NCBI GenBank assembly: GCA_048013815.1
Contig: CM106586.1
Coordinates: 13,020,001-13,084,000 of the forward strand
Length of the DNA stretch: 64,000 bases
DNA from: Setoptus koraiensis
Lineage: Eukaryota; Animalia; Arthropoda
Direction: 5' to 3'
Below the pieces are notes generated by a model. It searched no databases. It was not told the DNA's origin and worked only from the letters and a program-made list of their open reading frames with translations. The position numbers were made by a program, and so were the translations under genes. Shown here one piece after another: positions 23,755 through 35,769 of this stretch (its first letter is position 1; every line of letters starts with the position of its first letter).

Positions 23755-25452
<1,698 letters not shown>

Positions 25453-26728: not shown

Positions 26729-27610
26729 ATGGAATCTACATTTCAAATAGGCATGGACAAATTAAATACTAGGGTGCTCATAAAGGAGCCACGCGGTTTT
26801 ATTAGGTTGCTGCAAATGTTATTCTGTATTATTGTTTGGTCCACAACGGCAGGATTCTCAACTATAACCGAATTGCAAATTGATTGCCCTGGTGATAATA
26901 ATACTTACAGTGTGGAATATAAAGTGGAATATCCTTTTGACGCTCAAGAAAATAAGGTTGAAACACCAGCTAATTGTAGCGAAGAGACTTATGTTAATAC
27001 GCAAACCTTCCCTCTTGATTTCTCATGTAGCGCCATGTTATTTGTGCTAGTATGTGCACTAAGTATGTTTTACGCGCTAGGTTGTGCCATCCTTTATTCC
27101 GTTTATTCTTTAAAATACAGCTCCAATCCACTATTGCCCATGGTCGATTTAAGCATAACACTATTGCTGGCCTTGGTTTGGCTTGTTATGACATGTATGT
27201 GGGCGCTCAATGTTTCCGATCTGAAACATTACACGCACCCAAGCTACATTAAGAAGTTCGTATCAATTTGCGATGATCAAGTGTCAAATTGTGTGCCGGC
27301 TCATCCAGGAAAATGGTCCTCACTAAATGTATCGGTGGTGGCGGGATTCACCTGTGTTCTTCTTTGGGCCGCATCGTTGTGGTTTGTGTTCAAGGAAACG
27401 ACATTACACAAAGGCCAAAGCCAAGTGGTGACAACCTCGGGAGTTGCAGACTATAGACAACAGACATATTGTCAGCCAGGTCCTTCGGGTATTCAGCAAC
27501 AACAACAGATTCAGTCCCAACAATCGCAGCCGCCAATGATGAATAATCAAAATTATGCACAGTCACAAATGAGATCCAATAATCAATTGGCAGGCTATGC
27601 GGGCGAGTAG
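26729..27610 (+). CDS. Synaptophysin/synaptoporin-family MARVEL 4-TM protein (293 aa)
   Basis: KEPRGFIRLLQMLF, YKVEYPF, DFSCSAMLFV, SSLNVSVVAGF, WFVFKET motifs; four hydrophobic segments; Q/G-rich tail. Confidence 0.92.
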   Translation: MESTFQIGMDKLNTRVLIKEPRGFIRLLQMLFCIIVWSTTAGFSTITELQIDCPGDNNTYSVEYKVEYPFDAQENKVETPANCSEETYVNTQTFPLDFSCSAMLFVLVCALSMFYALGCAILYSVYSLKYSSNPLLPMVDLSITLLLALVWLVMTCMWALNVSDLKHYTHPSYIKKFVSICDDQVSNCVPAHPGKWSSLNVSVVAGFTCVLLWAASLWFVFKETTLHKGQSQVVTTSGVADYRQQTYCQPGPSGIQQQQQIQSQQSQPPMMNNQNYAQSQMRSNNQLAGYAGE

Positions 27611-27911
27611 CTTATCTGCAGGATTACGAACAGGGTAGTGAAGCATTTGAAAAAAGAAACATTCCAGTCTTGACTGCACACCCTGTACACACTGCCCTAT
27701 TTTAACAATACTACATGTGTTCATTATACAATATAGTATCATTATTACTACTATCTGTATTATTATTATCATCATCACGCGTACTATTATTATTATTCGT
27801 ACCACTCTGATTATTATCATTATTATTATCATTATTATTCATAATATTTTATTTATTATTGTCAATGGTATTATCATAAATATTGTCATTATTATTTATT
27901 TCAAAATCAAA

Positions 27912-28313
27912 ATGTCGGGCGCACTTAAAACCCTCGGAGGGGCCGTAGAACTAGACAAATTGTACAGATATATTTACCTTAGATGTCGTTCTCATGACAA
28001 AGCCCTAATAGATAGTTACGACAAATTCGTTGTTCAAGCTGCCAAGCATTTAGATATAGCTCATGTGGGCACAGAGCACCCCTTTAGACAAATTCACCGC
28101 CGGACTTTACTTGCATCCAGGCACGTGCACAAAAAATATCGGGTCCAATATGAATTTAGAACGTACCTGAGTGTTTTGCAATTTAAAAATTTAACTGGTT
28201 CAACGGCGGACACTTTCCTTGAATATGTTGAGAGAAACTTGCCAGAAGGTATGGATTTGACAGTCACAAAGCATGAGCTTGGCGCTCTGCCCTTTGATCT
28301 GTTCACGTTCTGA
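27912..28313 (+). CDS. MRPS10: Mitochondrial ribosomal protein S10 (133 aa)
   Basis: DKLYRYIYLRCRSHDKALIDSY, RTLLASRHVHKKYRVQYEFRTY, TGSTADTFLEYVERNLPEG. The ORF-track extension from 27717 is a poly-Ile read-through of an ATT repeat and is excluded. Confidence 0.93.
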   Translation: MSGALKTLGGAVELDKLYRYIYLRCRSHDKALIDSYDKFVVQAAKHLDIAHVGTEHPFRQIHRRTLLASRHVHKKYRVQYEFRTYLSVLQFKNLTGSTADTFLEYVERNLPEGMDLTVTKHELGALPFDLFTF

Positions 28314-28443: not shown

Positions 28444-31400
28444 ATGTATATTTATATTTTATATATAGCTACTAGGATGGCTAGCCTTAGGCCATTCTGC
28501 AAGAATATAACTAATAAACAAGGTAATCAATATAATATAGTTACAATTAGGACGTCAGCCGTTTCCTACTGCTATACCGCATCAGATATTTACGTTTTAT
28601 TTGCATTATCAATACTAATGCTTGAAAGCTCCAGCCATATTGATGCGCTAATAATACCCCAGATAAGTCCCAAGTTTTGTGAGAACCTGTTCTCCAAGAT
28701 AAATTTCTCTACGCCTGTTGAGGTTTACACTTCCACTATTTCCTTGGAAGATGGAGCAAAGTATCCGTTTTGGATACAGTGCCACAAGGCCAACAATAAC
28801 ATCAATAATAAGGTACCTGTTCAGAATAATGTGTCAAAGGCACCGACATTACAAAGCCTTACATCATGGAATGGACAAACTTCGCAACAATTAACCAAAA
28901 ACTTTAATGTTAATCAGGAGACGATAGGCAAGACTTCAGCCAAGAAATTTGATGCAATCAATCAAATTACAAGCTTGATATCGGAGGCAAAGGTACCATC
29001 GATTGCTGACTCTGCAAATACTACTTCAATCGTGTCCAAACCATCAGTTGGATCTAGCCTCTATGATCAGGCGCTACAAGATGCTACAGTAGATCACTCT
29101 CAGTGGGAAACATTGAGACACACAAGCATTGGTTACGATGGGTCGAGTGAGAAAGCATCTCTAAAAATGCCTCAAGAGGTCCAAGAATTCAGTGATACAA
29201 AAAATGAGTACATATCTAATATAACTCGAGTATGTGAAAACTACTTCACGAAGAAGTGTCAATCTTTCAAGATTGGTCTGCTAACTCAAAAATCAGTCAA
29301 ATGTCCTACTTGTGGCCTCGGTGATATGAACTGTGATAATCTTCATCATTGTCTTAGTGATTGTGGCCAGATCAAATCGGTTAATTATCCATTGAATTAT
29401 CCGAATAACCATAGATGCCGCTGGTCTATCAGAGCGCCGGAAAATCAATACGTCAATCTGAGCATAATAGATTTCGACATACCAAGCTCAACAAATGCCT
29501 CAAAATTGGGCACTTGCATATTTGACTATCTAACGCTGATAGACGGTTATACTGGAAAAAGATTAGGCGGTTTCTGTAACGAAAATCTGCCACCACCTTT
29601 CATTATTTCACCTTGGAACGAGCTTATAATACAATTCAATACAAACGGTGAAACTACTGGCCGTGGTTTCTACTTTCAATACGAGTTCAAACAGTTAGAA
29701 TTGAAAGAAGATATTAAGGTTCAGTTGGAGACAAATACAGACAAATACTCCGACGTTTGTCTACCAGGCTGGCAATACTTCAAAGGCCATTGCTATAAGG
29801 CTTATTTTGAGCATGAAACTTTACAATGGTACGATGCCGAGGCCAAATGTAATCAACATGGAAAGGGTTTAGATGGTCATCTAGTGAGCATACTGAACAA
29901 GGATGAAATGTTGGCCATTCACTATATGTTGACCAACATTTGGAAATCGCCTAGGTACAAAGATTTCTATATTGGGCTCATCGATGTTTCGCGCGAAGGC
30001 TTCTATCGGTGGAGCGACAACAATCCCATGAGTTACACCGATTGGCAGATAAGGCCAATTCTTATGGAGGAGGATTTGCCAGCACAACCAGACGGTGGAG
30101 CCTACGAGGATTGCACCATTATTAAATTCAATTCATTATCACAAACATCGAATTGGCACGATATACCCTGTTCACTGGGTAAACATATTCATTTAAGGAT
30201 GAACTCGTATCAGAGTAGATTGTGGGATTATGTTGATAGTTACATTTGTAAAACGGACTGTATTCCTGGTAGTAATCCCGTTCGTTGTGGTCTACATTCC
30301 GTTAGGAGGCCATTATTTTCAAATGAATTCATCCCATCAGCACACCAGCCAACTGGCTCATCGGCGCATTTAACACTAAGCAACAACAACCTAACAGGGA
30401 CTATGTCACCAGCCAACAACAAGACTACAAACAATAATATTGTCGCTTTTCAATCGCCAATGAAATATCAAGCAGGTCTCAGTGAGTCAGGGCGATCAAA
30501 CAATAGACAATCTAGATCGCATTCGGGCACCTTTTTAGATGACAACCGATATTTTATTTGCGACAATCTAGAAGTAATCAGTGTAGTGCTACGTTGTGAT
30601 GGTATTGCAAATTGTCGCGATGGTAGCGATGAATTGCGTGATTGTCACCACGATTGTTTAGATTGGCAATTCAAATGTGCAAATGGACGTTGCATAAGCA
30701 TTGGCTATTATTGTGATTTTGTCGATGATTGTGGCGATGGTTCCGACGAGAGTCATTGTGAACGGCATCGATGCAAACTGAATGAATTTAGATGCCAAAA
30801 TGGTCAGTGTATACCACTGAGCCAACGCTGTGATCTACTTACTGACTGTCACGATGCCTCTGACGAGGGTCGTCTGTGTAACATTGGTAGTAATTGCAAT
30901 ACAAATACAACTTTTCAGTGCTACTATGGTAATTGTATACCCATTTATGCAGTTTGTGACTACCAAACCGATTGTCCTGGAAAGTTTCGCGAAGACGAAG
31001 ACAGGGCTAGATGCGATCAATTTATAAAATCAATGCAGCCAGTTTATAATTATCACATGGCCTCGACGAACCAAAGATCTTACCCGGAAAAGACAGGCTA
31101 CGAGCTACAATTGTCTCACTTGAAAAATTATTCGAGACTATTGGATTGCGGTCAGTACCCCAGCAACCATGACAACGCTGCATTTAATATTGAAGATGGC
31201 TCTCTGAGTTATAGTTCTACTTCATCTACTATTGACGAAACGGAATTTTGTATCAGAGTGTTTGACAAAAGTTCTCCTATTACGCCTGCCATACTAGAAG
31301 ACATTGTGTACGTTTGTCAGAATTATACACTGCGGCATTGCCATGATTTATATTATTATAATAATATCACAAAAGATGGCTATTACGACATACAGCCCGA

Positions 31401-34400
31401 TCCATTCGACAAGACCTCACCTGTGGAATGTAAATTTGAGACTGTAGTAAATCGAATCAGTGGCAACAAGAGATCAACTATTACCGTTGCCAACACCCTC
31501 GTACATCACGATTCGGAGTTCATCATTCTATATCTACCTAAAACGACGACATCTCCGGTGAATGTGAACACTAAATTAGCCACCAGTAGTGGCACAATAT
31601 TGCCACCATCTACATCAATTAGAGCCTCGACACCTCTAAGCCAACAACAAGTGCTAGGTGGTAACGGCAGAAGTGTGGGCCTGTCAGGCAGTGCAATCAA
31701 CATAGATTTCCCGGTTAGCTACGACACTTCTATGGATGTGATCTCGTCGTTAATAAGCCAATCGAGACATTGTCACCAGTCTATAAAATGGAAATGTTTT
31801 ACACATAGCGGCCACCAGGTTAGCTGTCTAGATCAAATAGCCACAGTATTGACAAACAATTCGAATGTGCGTGTAAGAATGCCTATAAAATCTGGCACTA
31901 CCACTAGTGCCTTTTTGGACTTGTCTTTCAATAATCCGTCAATGGATAACAATAACAATAATAATAATAATTACAGCAGCAACTATCAGCAGCAATCATC
32001 GTCACAATACACCAATACTAATGGATTTTACGACAATGGCGTCAGCCAGAGACAGTTTCAAGGCGCTAGCACCTATGGGCCAAACGGTATGAATGTGGCT
32101 CCAATCGAGATGGGCATCATCAACGTAACAGGCAAGAATGTTTCTCAATTGCGTAAAGAACGCATTCAATTGTTCCTGAGTGAATCTATTCAGACAAGCA
32201 GCAAACATAACTCAACAAATAACAGCACCTTGCATAATAGCACTGCTGCAAGTGGCGACGTCTCTCCATGGTCTTTCATGATTATTAGAAACAAAAACCG
32301 CTTGCCTATAGTCAAGGCCATATTCAAGACGCAGATATATCTAGTGCCGGCGGTTGAGCATAATTCTATACAAAACCAGACTGTGCCGCCACCTCTATCA
32401 TCAACCAGCACCTCGTCGCCAGCGCCACCTTTGTTGACAACGCCACCTATGCCTGGAAAGACCACCCAGTTACCGGTGCCCATCTTCAAAGTGGAATATA
32501 TTATCGGCCCACTGGAGTGTAACGGTGCTGTTAAAATAGGCAAGGGAAGGAACGCATCGTTAGATGAACTGCAAACTGATAAAGCAACAACTCTTTCGAA
32601 GGAGGCCCTCGCAAATCGAGCTAACCAGCAACCTGTTAGTGTGTTTGATCCCTTCAATGGTGTTCGCGGACAACCGCAGAAACCATTGCCGCCGGAAGTC
32701 ATGTATAAATTCGCTAATAGTTTCATTGAGAGACACGAACTGAAGAATCAACCTCAAATGATTCAAGGCAAACCTGTCGAGGAGGAATTCGCCAAGTTAA
32801 TTGAAGCTGGCACTGACAATAGTGGAGTGCCATCACAACAGAGTCATCCGAAAAAGCCACCAGATACCACTAGTACTATTCTCTCGAATTCTACATCAGC
32901 AGACAATCCATCTGGTAACGATGACGAGATTGATGCCGTTGTTGAGAGTTCCGACACAAATGACGAAGATATTAGCCAAGATCCGATGGACACTAGCAAC
33001 AACAGTAACGCACCAGACGATATTGCCGCCGCCCTTCCGTCGCCTGTAGAAACAACAGAGACCAATTCCCACCTATTGAGTATTATCTCAAAAAAGGGGC
33101 CAGAAACGATGCAAGAGGCGACTACAGCGTTAACAAAGACAGATCCGCACACGAGAACCGGCGTAGATATTGATGATGTCGACTTTTACGACCATAATAC
33201 AATCAGCAGAGTTTATAGTGAAATGATTGATGGCAATCAACTTATGGAGGCTGTTTGCGAGCCCAAGAAGCAAGAATATTTTCGATGCAAATCGGGCCAC
33301 CTAATCGACAATAGGTTTCGTTGTATCTATGAGTATGACAGGTACAGCTATCAGATAGGTTGTCGTGACGTCACTCATTTGATAGACTGTCACGAATTTG
33401 AGTGTCCGCCACGCGATTATGTGAAATGTCCTAATTCTTATTGTATACCTAGGCGTTATATTTGCGATGGAAAATGGGATTGTATTGCCGGCGATGATGA
33501 GGTTGGTTGCGCTCGTTACATCTGTCCGGGCCAATACAAATGCGCCAATCAATCGTCTTGTATATTGTTGCACCAATTGTGCGATGGCTTCCGTCAATGT
33601 CCAATGGGCGACGATGAATGGTTCTGTGATTTATTGTGTCCGAAACGGTGCGATTGTATCGGCCAATCAGTCAATTGTCACAATGCCAACCTAACCAATT
33701 TACCATCAAATTACATTTCGAAATCTGTGCGAAAATTAGATCTATCTTATAATAGTTTGGGACCAAATCTATTGGACACAGATTTTAGCGCCTATCACGA
33801 TCTAGGCGAGCTTATATTGCATCACAATGGTATTGAAGTTTTGATACCGCGCAAATTTCATCAATTGAGAAATCTCTACAAATTGGATCTGAGCAACAAT
33901 CAAATACATTCGGTTAAGCGTGGCGCATTTGCCGGATTGCGGCGAGTCACGCAACTATTGCTAGAGTCAAACCCGGAATTGGTTGTACTAGAGCCAGAGG
34001 CCTTCTTGGGTTTGTCGTCGTTGCAAATTCTCAATATATCATCGTCTAGAATACACATACTCAAAAAGAATACATTCGACGGATTGACTTCGCTGAGGCA
34101 TCTGCTATTGCGAAGCAATTTAATCAACGAGATAGAAGACGGAGCCTTCCGAAGTCTCAACTCGCTTGTGAGCTTGGATATGCGCGGCAACGATATCAGA
34201 TATTTCACCAAGACAGTGTTCAGTGATTTGAAATCGTTGCGCAATCTGTCGACGGACGCATTTAAGTTTTGTTGTCTCATGTCGTCGCAAATACCCGCCG
34301 ATAGGTGTTTACCGTTGCCAGATGAAATATCGGATTGTGAGGATCTGATGAGTTCCGTTTTGCAGCGTAGCTGCATCTGGGCCATAGGTATAATAGCGTG

Positions 34401-35769
34401 CGTGGGCAATTGTGTTGTTATCACGTGGAGATATCGTGAATACCAGAAAAGAAACTATTACAGCCGAGTCAATTCAACATTGTTATTATCGCTTGGTTGT
34501 TCCGATCTACTCATGGGCATATATCTGATTATCATAGCCGGAGTGGATGTCTATTACAGAGGCTGCTACATAGAGAATGCTGATAATTGGCGCCAGAGTT
34601 TTCTTTGTAATGTCTCTGGCTTCATATCGACCGTTTCCAGTGAGGCCTCTGTATTCACGCTAGTCTTGATTGCCCTAAACAGATGCTTCGAGTTGTGTAA
34701 ACCCTTGAATTTCAAGTATAAATTCACAATGAGATGGACGCATAAACTCATAATGATTTCATGGATTATGGCCCTAATAATAGCCACATTACCCCTAGTG
34801 ATCAAGCCATATTTTCGAGATGAATTCTATTCAAGATCGGGCGTTTGCCTGTCATTTCACATAACCAATCAAAAACCAGCCGGATGGGAATACTCAATAG
34901 CCATTCACTTGTGTGCTAACTTGGCGGCATTCATAATAATAGTGGCCTGTTACACAGCCATAACTTTTGAAATTAAACGCTCCAGTTTATCACGCCAGGA
35001 ACAAGAAACAGTGCCAGTAAAGGTGAGGAATAGTAACTAGTCGCTTGATTGTTTGTTTGCTTGTTAGATTGATTATTCATCGCTTAATCATGGTTGCCAC
35101 TGTTCTCGATACCCCACACAGAGTATACGAATGATAGCCGCGATTGTTTTTACAAATTTCTTTTGTTGGTCGCCTACCATGTTTATGAGCCTTCTCTCCC
35201 TATTCGGATACAAATTTCCGGCCGCCTGGCTCTCATGGATAGCAGTCTTCTTTCTACCCGCCAATTCCGCCATAAACCCAATGATTTACACTATACCAAC
35301 CATCAAGAAGAGCATATTGACACTCATGACAAATCATCGATCATCATCTATGAGAAAAAACAACACGCTAAGCAAGTCTCACAACGGCTTGAATCCGGAA
35401 ATAAACAATCTAAAGCTTCCTGTGCCACCAGGTTATAGGCGCCTAAACAAGTATTTATCGGAGGATAGAGGCACCCCAATGGAGGCAAGGGAGCTACTGA
35501 AAATACTATACAATATTGCTCAATTGATCCAATCTAAACATAGCCTTGGACAGGCTTACGGTACAATACTCAGCATAGACAATATCTTTGTTTCTGACAC
35601 AGTTATTCCAAATAAATTATCATTCTATTTGCCTGATTATAATAAATTTCCAGCAAAGCGAGAATTACAAACTAATGACATTCAACAATTTGGAGATATT
35701 TTACGTGAAATTTTAACATATCCGAAACTGTATCCCATGAAACGTAGCCAAAATAACACGATGCACTGA
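28444..35769 (+). CDS. Giant GRL101-like (LGR type C) GPCR: CUB, C-type lectin, 4 LDLa, fibrinogen-like module, 3 LDLa, LRRNT/LRRs, 7TM, kinase-like tail; exons 28444(or 28477)-35022 and 35068-35769
   Basis: CUB ~29362-29690; CLECT ~29758-30255; LDLa 30555-31015 and 33256-33627; LRRs ~33637-34250; hinge FCCL...EISDCEDL; NSAINPMIY in TM7. A 45-nt phase-0 GT-AG intron (35023-35067) joins the two ORFs in frame. The start codon is uncertain. Confidence 0.9.

What the first reader, a model, noticed from the sequence alone, without database searches (positions are those of the whole stretch)
35437..35718. Apparent pseudokinase fragment fused to the GPCR cytoplasmic tail
Seen: after TM7 the tail reads RLNKYL...ELLKILYNIAQLIQSKHSLGQAYGTILSIDNIFV...FYLPDY...NDIQQFGDILREILT. 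Established: kinase subdomains V-IX read L..YL...~L.IA..IA.GL.YLHS.G.VHGDL...NILV...DFG...SDVWSFGV.L.EI.T. Inference: a catalytically dead kinase C-lobe with no N-lobe, no HRD Asp and no DFG, acting as a built-in scaffold. With the huge ectodomain this would be a lectin-adhesion-LGR-pseudokinase hybrid receptor, the best candidate here for an undescribed signalling system.
Basis: partly seen in the sequence, partly recalled or inferred. Interest (0 to 1): 0.78.

Follow-up and report, generated by a model that had tools for sequence, protein, structure and literature searches.

The report
Dead half-kinase on a GPCR tail
The cytoplasmic tail of this mite's giant GRL101-type hormone receptor ends in a small folded domain that is a catalytically dead remnant of a protein kinase, conserved from mites to molluscs and starfish, and I found no paper describing it, so it may give this orphan receptor a signalling handle beyond G proteins.

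Summary
Window 35425-35715 (+) lies in the same exon as TM6-TM7 of a GRL101-type (type C2) LGR of an eriophyoid-like mite. It encodes a ~100-residue module homologous to the core of the protein-kinase C-lobe.

Evidence:
- The single sequence finds nothing in Pfam or PDB.
- The tail is conserved in about 70 orthologues: mites, ticks, spiders, scorpion, sea spider, molluscs, hemichordates, echinoderms.
- A 12-row profile of it hits only kinases in PDB (VRK3 pseudokinase, E 3.6e-6).
- It hits kinases in a 1.84-billion-protein library and, apart from itself, only kinase genes in its own genome.
- The AlphaFold model (pLDDT 86.5) matches only kinase-fold chains (Z up to 10.7).

What is kept: hinge/alphaD, alphaE, a catalytic loop without its Asp (0 of 46), beta7-beta8, a degenerate DFG whose Asp is mostly kept, and alphaF with its Asp and Gly.

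What is missing in every orthologue: the N-lobe, the activation segment/APE and alphaG-alphaI.

It is not a KIND domain. Function is inferred, not shown: a non-catalytic docking or regulatory domain. The papers I could search do not link GRL101 or LGRs to a kinase-like tail. The scan's earlier notes hold no such finding on other DNA.

The parts
28444..35022 (+). Exon 1 of the GRL101-type LGR: CUB, C-type lectin, six LDLa, LRRNT + LRRs, TM1-TM5
   Evidence: 2198-aa open frame. Pfam on 28444-35022: Ldl_recept_a 8e-32, LRR_8 2e-29, CUB 1e-18, 7tm_1 1e-17, Lectin_C 6e-9. Orthologues named GRL101.
35023..35121 (+).
   Evidence: Sequence read. The 99-nt model gives 25 residues between the TM5 Cys-Tyr motif and the start of TM6, within the 21-35 I counted by eye in three orthologues printed. 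The 45-nt model adds 18 residues, giving 43.
35122..35289 (+). Start of exon 2: TM6, TM7 up to NPMIY (35275-35289)
   Evidence: Translation; 7tm_1 profile positions 202-260; alignment with orthologues.
35290..35424 (+). Helix-8/linker region, 45 residues, Ser/Asn/Lys-rich, not conserved
   Evidence: Alignment columns without consensus. Linker median 54 aa in 61 orthologues, too short for a kinase N-lobe.
35425..35715 (+). Kinase-derived module (model residues 7-103): the conserved, folded half-kinase
   Evidence: AF2 pLDDT 86.5, pTM 0.78. Foldseek and VIA-align top hits are all kinase folds. Profile hits to kinases.
35425..35460 (+). PPGY motif and alphaD-like helix (kinase subdomain V / hinge equivalent)
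   Evidence: P, G and Y invariant in 37 of 37 arachnid sequences. Helix 13-18 in the model. Aligns to kinase positions just after the hinge.
35485..35544 (+). alphaE-like helix ending in the near-invariant His (35539-35541)
   Evidence: Helix 27-46. His in 44 of 46. Aligns to the ...LH of kinase subdomain VIa in VRK3, PhK-gamma and B-Raf.
35557..35583 (+). Catalytic-loop remnant YGTILSIDN: HRD replaced by YGT (one extra residue), the loop Asn retained
   Evidence: HMM alignments to HRDLKxxN of kinases. No Asp at the catalytic-base column in 46 of 46 sequences; Asn column N in 15 of 46.
35587..35643 (+). beta7-beta8 hairpin and degenerate DFG (PDY-N; Asp at 35635-35637)
   Evidence: Strands 61-67 and 70-74. 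The Asp aligns with the DFG Asp of B-Raf and of the genome's own VPS15-like kinase. D in 34 of 46.
35659..35715 (+). alphaF-like helix with near-invariant Asp (35677-35679) and Gly (35692-35694) = kinase subdomain IX (D..FG)
   Evidence: Helix 85-103. D in 43 of 46, G in 42 of 46. Aligns with SDVxSFG of the genome's own tyrosine-kinase-type genes, with about 22 residues of activation segment/APE missing.
35716..35769 (+). Short unstructured C-terminus and stop codon (35767-35769)
   Evidence: pLDDT 52 for the last block. A median of 12 residues follows the module in orthologues, so there is no room for alphaG-alphaI.

Best explanation
Window 35425-35715 encodes an independently folding domain of about 100 residues, tethered by a ~45-residue flexible linker to TM7 of a GRL101-type (type C2) leucine-rich-repeat GPCR. 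The domain descends from a protein kinase. It keeps only the structural core of the C-lobe: hinge/alphaD, alphaE, catalytic loop, beta7-beta8, the Mg-loop and alphaF.

It cannot phosphorylate anything. It has no N-lobe and hence no ATP site, no catalytic Asp, no activation segment and no substrate-binding alphaG-alphaI subdomain.

Shown: homology, fold, loss of catalytic parts, and conservation across chelicerates, molluscs, hemichordates and echinoderms.

Inferred: it works as a non-catalytic docking surface. It would hold a cytosolic partner at the receptor, or release it on activation, much as KIND domains and pseudokinases act as protein-protein interaction modules. This would give the orphan receptor an output or a regulatory input besides G-protein coupling. 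The faces normally covered by the N-lobe and by alphaH/alphaI are the likeliest binding surfaces.
For: Conservation:
- The tail aligns end to end with the C-termini of orthologues from mites, ticks, spiders, a scorpion, Haliotis, Argopecten, Ostrea, Mercenaria, Saccoglossus and Acanthaster.
- A profile built in the script finds the module in 70 of 120 LGR hits, 61 of them over most of its length. In the coordinates printed it lies at or near the C-terminal end.

Sequence homology to kinases:
- A3 profile against PDB: 637 hits at E<=10; the best 60 are all kinases (VRK3 3.6e-6, PhK-gamma 6e-5, B-Raf 1.3e-4).
- 1.84-billion-protein library: 443 hits at E<=1e-3. 9 of 9 non-LGR hits checked are Pkinase proteins.
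- Own genome: itself plus four kinase genes only.
- hhalign against the genome's own VPS15-like kinase: Prob 92.8, E 4e-7. Against its own tyrosine-kinase-type gene: Prob 81, E 1.2e-5.
- Pfam Pkinase positions 85-134 hit by the Argopecten exon alone, E 4.3e-4.

Fold:
- AF2 pLDDT 86.5, pTM 0.78.
- Foldseek top 50 nearly all kinases, probabilities up to 1.0.
- VIA-align over 48,161 chains: top 50 all kinase-like folds; Rad53 Z 10.7, rmsd 2.5 A over 95 residues.

Dead and truncated:
- No Asp at the HRD column in 46 of 46 sequences.
- Linker median 54 aa; 12 aa after the module.
- Activation segment deleted.

Structural anchors kept: His 44/46, alphaF Asp 43/46, Gly 42/46.
Against: - No experiment or expression data; the function is pure inference.
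- Foldseek E-values are weak (best 0.025). Single-sequence Pfam scores stay below the gathering threshold (20.2 against 31.7 bits).
- A C-lobe core stripped of alphaG-alphaI and of the N-lobe would expose hydrophobic faces. It may not be stable alone and may instead pack on the receptor, the membrane or a second copy.
- No partner is known.
- AlphaFold may be biased towards the kinase fold once the alignment carries kinase-like motifs.
Confidence: 0.78

Rival explanations
1. The module acts within the receptor rather than recruiting a partner. It either docks on the intracellular loops or G-protein cavity as an autoinhibitory or bias-setting plug, or it pairs with the same module of a second receptor to drive dimerisation.
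For: - A flexible tether of about 45-55 residues in orthologues would let the module reach the receptor core.
- The truncated fold lacks the helices that normally bury alphaE/alphaF, so it needs something to pack against.
Against: Nothing tested here distinguishes this from partner docking. No co-variation or multimer modelling was possible with these tools.
Confidence: 0.25
2. It is an ordinary, unstructured GPCR C-tail, and the kinase resemblance is chance or a short-motif artefact.
For: - The window sequence alone gives no Pfam hit at E<=1 and no PDB sequence hit at E<=10.
- Foldseek finds no match at E<=1e-3.
Against: - Conserved over four phyla.
- Confident AF2 fold.
- Profile hits are exclusively kinases, over 50-72 aligned residues, at E down to 3.6e-6 in PDB; one non-LGR hit that I did not check reaches 3.7e-16 in 1.84 billion proteins, and the best one confirmed as a kinase reaches 6.1e-15.
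- The alphaF motif aligns in register after a clean deletion of the activation segment.
Confidence: 0.03
3. [quoted passage not shown]
For: Same general idea: a kinase C-lobe without an N-lobe and without catalytic residues, used for protein binding (KIND literature listed).
Against: - No PF16474 hit at E<=10 in any of 12 tail sequences.
- hhalign of the tail profile against this genome's own KIND region gives Prob 0.1, while kinases of the same genome give Prob 81-93.
- The module is about half the length of the KIND profile (197 positions) and lacks alphaG-alphaI.
Confidence: 0.03
4. It is a decaying relic of an ancestral receptor-kinase fusion with no present function.
For: Every catalytic and substrate-binding part is gone. 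The module is absent from the pancrustacean and Aplysia GRL101-like tails examined.
Against: The structural-core residues stay near-invariant (H 44/46, D 43/46, G 42/46), and the module keeps its length and position from mites to starfish. That is not expected of neutral decay over this time span.
Confidence: 0.05

Closest known systems
[quoted passage not shown]
   Same: A kinase-derived module lacking the N-lobe and catalytic residues, used as a protein-protein interaction surface. It is the only established precedent for a C-lobe-only kinase remnant (papers listed).
   Different: No detectable sequence relationship. The KIND profile is about twice as long (197 positions). From my own knowledge, KIND keeps the alphaG-alphaI part and sits at the N-terminus of cytosolic scaffold proteins. 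This module keeps only alphaD-alphaF, has lost the activation segment, and ends a GPCR.
Full-length pseudokinase domains (VRK3, TYK2/JAK JH2, PAN3, STK40, KSR; also the kinase-homology domain of receptor guanylyl cyclases, the last from my own knowledge)
   Same: Kinase fold with a degraded catalytic site. VRK3 is the best PDB sequence hit, and its catalytic loop reads HGN, as in the scallop orthologue. PAN3, JAK and STK40 pseudokinases appear among the structural matches.
   Different: Those are complete two-lobed domains. Here the N-lobe, activation segment and alphaG-alphaI are absent in all orthologues examined.
GRL101 / type C2 LGR receptors (Lymnaea GRL101; arthropod LGR5)
   Same: The whole gene is a member: many LDLa repeats, LRRs and a rhodopsin-type 7TM. 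Its best named relatives are annotated GRL101. The family is described as an orphan, with a proposed IGF-type ligand, in bioRxiv 10.1101/2021.04.15.440029 and in PMC4079206.
   Different: In the passages mentioning GRL101 that I read in those two papers, nothing is said of a folded or kinase-like cytoplasmic tail. The module occurs in the large CUB/lectin-bearing branch, but not in the pancrustacean or Aplysia GRL101-like tails I looked at.
GPCR-PIPK and other protist GPCR-kinase fusions (PMC5784254, seen by title and the start of its abstract)
   Same: A seven-transmembrane receptor with a kinase-type domain fused to its C-terminus.
   Different: From my own knowledge, those carry a complete, presumably active phospholipid kinase and occur outside animals. 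Here the remnant is of the protein-kinase type, incomplete and dead, in bilaterian animals.
Minimal protein-kinase-like enzymes (RIO2, Bud32/KEOPS, WaaP/Kdo kinases)
   Same: Their C-lobes also lack the alphaG-alphaI subdomain, and they appear among the structural matches (Z 8.3-8.8). The module therefore corresponds to the universal kinase-like C-lobe core.
   Different: They keep an N-lobe and catalytic residues and are enzymes.

Membership tests
Protein kinase superfamily (homology) | Statistically significant sequence similarity to protein kinase domains in the correct register | tested here: met
   - Profile against PDB: best 60 all kinases, E 3.6e-6.
- Kinases hit in 1.84 billion proteins.
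- hhalign Prob 81-93 against own-genome kinases.
- Pkinase profile positions 85-134 matched.
Protein kinase superfamily (homology) | Kinase-like three-dimensional fold of the matched part | tested here: met
   The AF2 model (pLDDT 86.5) matches only kinase-fold chains: Z up to 10.7, rmsd 2.5 A over 95 residues. This rests on a predicted, not a solved, structure.
Active eukaryotic protein kinase (Pfam PF00069 / PF07714 domain) | Score above the Pfam gathering threshold | tested here: not met
   The window tail has no hit at E<=10. The best orthologue exon scores 20.2 bits against a cut-off of 31.7.
Active eukaryotic protein kinase (Pfam PF00069 / PF07714 domain) | N-lobe (Gly-rich loop, VAIK Lys, alphaC Glu) forming the ATP site | tested here: not met
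   Only 45 non-conserved residues lie between NPMIY and the module. The median is 54 in 61 orthologues. All profile and structure matches start at the hinge/alphaD.
Active eukaryotic protein kinase (Pfam PF00069 / PF07714 domain) | Catalytic Asp of the HRD motif | tested here: not met
   The column holds G/S/T/K/L/Q/I/R/N and never D in 46 sequences; the window has Thr.
Active eukaryotic protein kinase (Pfam PF00069 / PF07714 domain) | DFG Asp (Mg-binding loop) | tested here: met
   The Asp of PDY aligns with the DFG Asp. D in 34 of 46; the Phe and Gly are not kept.
Active eukaryotic protein kinase (Pfam PF00069 / PF07714 domain) | Activation segment with APE, and the alphaG-alphaI subdomain | tested here: not met
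   About 22 residues are missing between the DFG-equivalent and alphaF relative to the genome's own kinases. Only a median of 12 residues follows alphaF.
KIND domain (PF16474) | Match to the KIND profile or to a bona fide KIND sequence | tested here: not met
   No PF16474 hit at E<=10 in 12 tails. hhalign against the genome's own KIND region gives Prob 0.1.
GRL101 / type C2 LGR (the receptor as a whole) | Multiple LDLa repeats + LRR ectodomain + rhodopsin-type 7TM, and closest relatives being GRL101 receptors | tested here: met
   Pfam: six LDLa stretches, LRR_8, LRRNT, 7tm_1. Relatives annotated GRL101 from Tetranychus, spiders and molluscs at E down to 1e-198.
GRL101 / type C2 LGR (the receptor as a whole) | Ligand and G-protein coupling typical of LGRs | not testable with these tools
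   The receptor family is an orphan; an IGF-type ligand is only hypothesised.

The most novel reading that the evidence does not exclude
The half-kinase is the surviving stump of an ancestral bilaterian LGR-protein-kinase chimera, and it still signals by pairing with a real kinase or pseudokinase partner, as KSR-RAF or HER3-type allosteric pairs do. That would give GRL101 receptors a G-protein-independent, kinase-coupled output. It would also physically link the GPCR and kinase-receptor branches of insulin/relaxin-like peptide signalling, which the literature treats as separate.
Probability: 0.12. Interest if true: 0.9.

Novelty: new variant of a known kind. Interest (0 to 1): 0.7.

Why it matters
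GRL101-type receptors are widespread orphan GPCRs of invertebrates: ticks, mites, spiders, molluscs and echinoderms. They have been proposed as second receptors for IGF-like peptides.

A conserved, folded, kinase-derived domain on their tail means these receptors probably do more than couple to G proteins. It gives a concrete handle of about 100 residues, with three near-invariant anchor residues, for pull-downs, deletion mutants and structural work.

For kinase evolution it adds a second, independent example, after KIND, of a C-lobe-only kinase remnant kept as a module, and a smaller one. It shows that the alphaD-alphaF core can persist without the N-lobe, the activation segment and the alphaG-alphaI subdomain.

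It also shows why annotation misses the module. Single sequences stay under Pfam thresholds; only a profile of orthologues or a structure prediction reveals it.

Tried and rejected
- **Single-sequence searches of the window tail.** Pfam at E<=1, PDB at E<=10 and a six-frame search of the own genome found nothing but the tail itself.
- **Alignment A2.** The C-terminal exon pieces of the two molluscs and the starfish were misaligned onto beta7. I dropped those rows and used A3.
- **KIND membership.** Tested and rejected.
- **PPGY as a WW-binding PPxY motif.** Rejected by eye: ticks, spiders and the scorpion read PHGY, which does not fit PPxY, and the position matches kinase subdomain V.
- **A specific origin from VPS15.** VPS15-like genes are the best own-genome hits, and their 'TDFASYKP' resembles 'PDYNAYKV'. 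This is suggestive only: the PDB search puts VRK3, PhK-gamma and RAF first, so I make no claim.
- **Look-ups that failed.** P0046 and P0027 were not on record, and P0064 gave no DNA because the gene is too long.
- In my own scripts I used annotated orthologue proteins as returned by the search.
- **Human DNA.** Nothing in the window looks human.
- **Not done.** I did not survey cnidarian, annelid or other LGRs, and I could not consult InterPro or CDD.
Full report
**1. What is in the sequence**

Window 35122-35769 (+) is one open frame. The stop is at 35767-35769.

Upstream lies a 2198-aa open frame, 28444-35040. Up to 35022 it carries CUB, C-type lectin, six LDLa repeats, LRRNT/LRRs and TM1-TM5 (Pfam). 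The two frames are separated by a gt..ag intron, 35023-35121 (99 nt).

The 99-nt model gives 25 residues between the TM5 Cys-Tyr motif and the start of TM6, inside the 21-35 I counted by eye in three of the orthologues printed. The 45-nt model gives 43. Either way the frame into the tail is kept. The tail shares its exon with TM6-TM7, so it needs no splice of its own.

Everything was searched exon by exon, by reference. Nothing here looks human.

**2. Whose gene it is**

The LRR-7TM part finds 565 proteins:
- a 99% identical protein from an unnamed assembly;
- a series of relatives at 68-77% identity, the only named one being Fragariocoptes setiger, an eriophyoid mite;
- then Oppia, Halotydeus, Tetranychus ('G-protein coupled receptor GRL101'), ticks, spiders, a scorpion and Sarcoptes;
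- at about 40% identity, molluscs, hemichordates and echinoderms.

The gene is therefore the GRL101-type (type C2) LGR of an eriophyoid-like mite. The family is an orphan; an IGF-like ligand has been proposed (bioRxiv 10.1101/2021.04.15.440029; PMC4079206). None of the 120 listed relatives carries a precomputed Pfam kinase domain.

**3. The tail alone is silent, but it is conserved**

The window tail gives:
- no Pfam family at E<=1;
- no PDB sequence match at E<=10;
- no second copy in the 48.8 Mb available of its genome.

BLAST of the last exon against the 120 relatives nevertheless aligns right through the tail. This holds in mites, ticks, spiders, a scorpion, Haliotis, Argopecten, Ostrea, Mercenaria, Saccoglossus and Acanthaster.

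A profile built in a script finds the module in 70 of the 120. In the coordinates printed it lies at or near the C-terminal end. Three further echinoderm paralogues have weak versions. The pancrustacean and Aplysia 'GRL101-like' tails have none.

The consensus has these landmarks:
- P-x-G-Y (P, G and Y invariant in 37 arachnid sequences);
- L..(F/Y)L;
- a helix ending in His (44 of 46);
- a Gly-rich loop;
- (V/I)-F-V;
- Y-L-P-D;
- D...FG, with D in 43 and G in 42 of 46.

**4. It is homologous to protein kinases**

I built alignment A3 from 12 by-reference rows. They are the whole tails of the window, Fragariocoptes and Sarcoptes, plus exon pieces from Argopecten, Haliotis, Rhipicephalus, Tetranychus, Oppia and Acanthaster.

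- **PDB sequences.** The profile matches 637 distinct chains at E<=10, and the best 60 are all protein kinases. Top hits are the pseudokinase VRK3 (3.6e-6), phosphorylase kinase gamma (6e-5), then B-Raf/C-Raf/KSR (from 1.3e-4). The alignments cover 50-72 residues from just after the hinge to the DFG.
- **1.84-billion-protein library.** There are 443 hits at E<=1e-3. The top ones are GRL101-type tails. From about rank 24 they are long proteins matched in several stretches, and all nine that I scanned are Pkinase proteins.
- **Own genome.** The profile finds itself (1e-39) and four other places: two VPS15-like kinases and two tyrosine-kinase-type genes.
- **hhalign.** The tail profile scores Prob 92.8, E 4e-7 against the VPS15-like kinase (66 columns). 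It scores Prob 81, E 1.2e-5 against a tyrosine-kinase-type gene.
- **Single exon.** The Argopecten exon alone touches Pkinase profile positions 85-134 at E 4.3e-4, below the gathering score. That sub-threshold score probably explains why routine annotation does not mark it.
- **Language-model look-alikes.** These include a cluster of kinase fragments at 0.92. This is a lead only.

**5. The predicted fold agrees**

The input was the window tail as first row plus 45 orthologues (A1; the register was checked). AlphaFold2 without templates gives mean pLDDT 86.5 and pTM 0.78. The elements are helix 13-18, helix 27-46, a loop, strands 61-67 and 70-74, and helix 85-103.

Foldseek against PDB returns almost only kinases in its top 50: WEE1, LCK, MK2, ULK1, PAN3, TYK2 JH2 and LRRK1. 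Probabilities reach 1.0 and TM-score 0.63, but E-values are no better than 0.025.

VIA-align against 48,161 representative chains gives 43 chains at Z>=8, and the 50 entries listed are all of the kinase-like fold. The top matches are:
- Rad53: Z 10.7, rmsd 2.5 A over 95 residues;
- RNase L pseudokinase: Z 9.8;
- TBK1: Z 9.6;
- JAK and P. falciparum FIKK13: Z 9.5 each;
- PAN3 (Z 8.6), RIO2 (Z 8.5) and Bud32 (Z 8.5) lower in the list.

The tool's own note says unrelated models typically reach a best Z of 7-8. The weight therefore lies in the exclusivity of the hits and in the agreement with the sequence evidence.

**6. Anatomy in kinase terms**

This mapping comes from the HMM alignments and the counts.

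| Kinase element | Window coordinates | State |
|---|---|---|
| Subdomain V / alphaD (PPGY..L..YL) | 35425-35460 | kept |
| alphaE, ending in the conserved His | 35485-35544 | kept |
| Catalytic loop (YGTILSIDN) | 35557-35583 | HRD is YGT; no Asp at the catalytic-base column in 46 of 46; loop Asn kept in the window, N in 15 of 46 |
| beta7-beta8 | 35587-35628 | kept |
| DFG (PDY-N) | 35635-35643 | the Asp aligns with the DFG Asp, D in 34 of 46; Phe and Gly lost |
| Activation segment with APE | - | about 22 residues absent |
| alphaF (D..FG, subdomain IX) | 35659-35715 | kept |
| After alphaF | 35716-35766 | 17 poorly predicted residues; median 12 in orthologues, so no alphaG-alphaI |
| Before the module | 35290-35424 | 45 residues; median 54 in 61 orthologues, so no N-lobe in any orthologue |

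The domain cannot bind ATP in the kinase manner or catalyse phosphotransfer.

**7. What it is not**

It is not a KIND domain. No tail hits PF16474 at E<=10. hhalign against this genome's own KIND region (a Spir-type gene at G000:C2:24.11 Mb) gives Prob 0.1. The same test with kinases gives 81-93.

It is not a gene-fusion artefact either. It lies in the same exon as TM6-TM7 here, in Fragariocoptes and in Sarcoptes. Elsewhere it is split by an intron at a conserved place, after beta7.

**8. How it probably works (inference)**

What remains is the hydrophobic scaffold of the C-lobe: alphaE and alphaF, tied together by the alphaF Asp and the catalytic loop. It has been stripped of everything that binds nucleotide or substrate.

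Conservation of exactly the core-forming residues over this evolutionary distance argues for a folded, selected domain. By analogy with KIND domains and pseudokinases, the most likely role is a docking surface on a flexible tether. It would hold or release a cytosolic partner depending on the receptor's state.

A close rival is intramolecular docking on the receptor core, or module-module dimerisation. The truncated fold would expose faces that are normally buried, which favours that view. I put homology and fold at about 0.9, 'non-catalytic' at about 0.95, and partner docking as the main function at about 0.5.

**9. Novelty**

Searches of 8.1 million PMC papers and 0.36 million preprints found no paper holding both GRL101 and pseudokinase. 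A combined search for GRL101 with kinase-domain or tail terms listed only unrelated papers among its top 15 of 5,231. Searches for LGR/LDLa with pseudokinase, and for a GPCR tail with C-lobe and pseudokinase, returned only unrelated work. In the two GRL101 papers I opened, I read only the passages mentioning GRL101; these discuss the ectodomain, the 7TM and phylogeny.

The scan's earlier notes hold nothing similar on other DNA. I could not check InterPro or CDD.

The closest precedent, KIND, is a different and larger C-lobe remnant in cytosolic proteins. GPCR-kinase fusions known from protists (PMC5784254, seen only by title and the start of its abstract) carry, from my own knowledge, complete lipid kinases. 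I therefore class this as a new variant of a known kind: a kinase-derived non-catalytic module, in a new minimal form and a new context.

Noticed in passing
window 35023-35121: The TM5/TM6 intron has two plausible in-frame acceptors, after 35067 (45-nt intron, adds 18 residues to ICL3) and after 35121 (99 nt). The ICL3 length of orthologues favours the 99-nt version, but alternative splicing is possible.
   Followed up: partly
L002:18671/20082, L003:32537/32742, L004:64099/65288, L005:5344/5428, L006:10112/10169, L007:34566/36441: An intron sits at the same place inside the module (just after beta7) in scallop, abalone, tick, spider mite, oribatid mite and starfish. It is absent in the window, Fragariocoptes (L008) and Sarcoptes (L009). 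This looks like an old intron lost in some mite lineages.
   Followed up: partly
L009:9898-10413: The Sarcoptes scabiei orthologue carries an insertion of about 55 residues, rich in Lys, Glu and Asp, between beta7 and beta8 of the module.
   Followed up: no
G000:C2:10135092-10135250 (-) and G000:C2:10182768-10182980 (+) (L014, L013): Two VPS15-like kinase genes lie about 47 kb apart on opposite strands, in open frames of 460 and 1242 aa. They are the best non-self matches of the tail profile in this genome. Their 'TDFASYKP' after beta8 resembles the module's 'PD(Y/F)NAY(K/R)'.
   Followed up: partly
window 31330-33360 (about residues 960-1640 of exon 1): The best Pfam stretches lie at 304-812 and 1732-2188 (one search prints only the best stretch of each family). 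The ectodomain between them is rich in Asn/Ser/Gln runs. Another first-stage note (s1-318785) proposes a fibrinogen-like module there; I did not test that.
   Followed up: no
window 23910-25335 (-), 26729-27610 (+), 27717-28313 (+): Neighbouring genes read, by eye only, as a WD40 histone-binding RBBP4/Caf1-like gene in two exons, a four-TM synaptogyrin/synaptophysin-like gene with a Gln-rich tail, and a mitochondrial ribosomal protein S10-like gene just upstream of the receptor's start codon.
   Followed up: no
G000:C2:24113434-24114816 (L010, L011): This is the genome's own KIND-domain gene (Spir-type; PF16474 at 75 bits), with the KIND match split into two pieces about 730 nt apart.
   Followed up: no
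window 35557-35583 and L008: The window and Fragariocoptes share a one-residue insertion in the catalytic-loop remnant (YGT-I/T-L) that no other orthologue in the alignment has.
   Followed up: no
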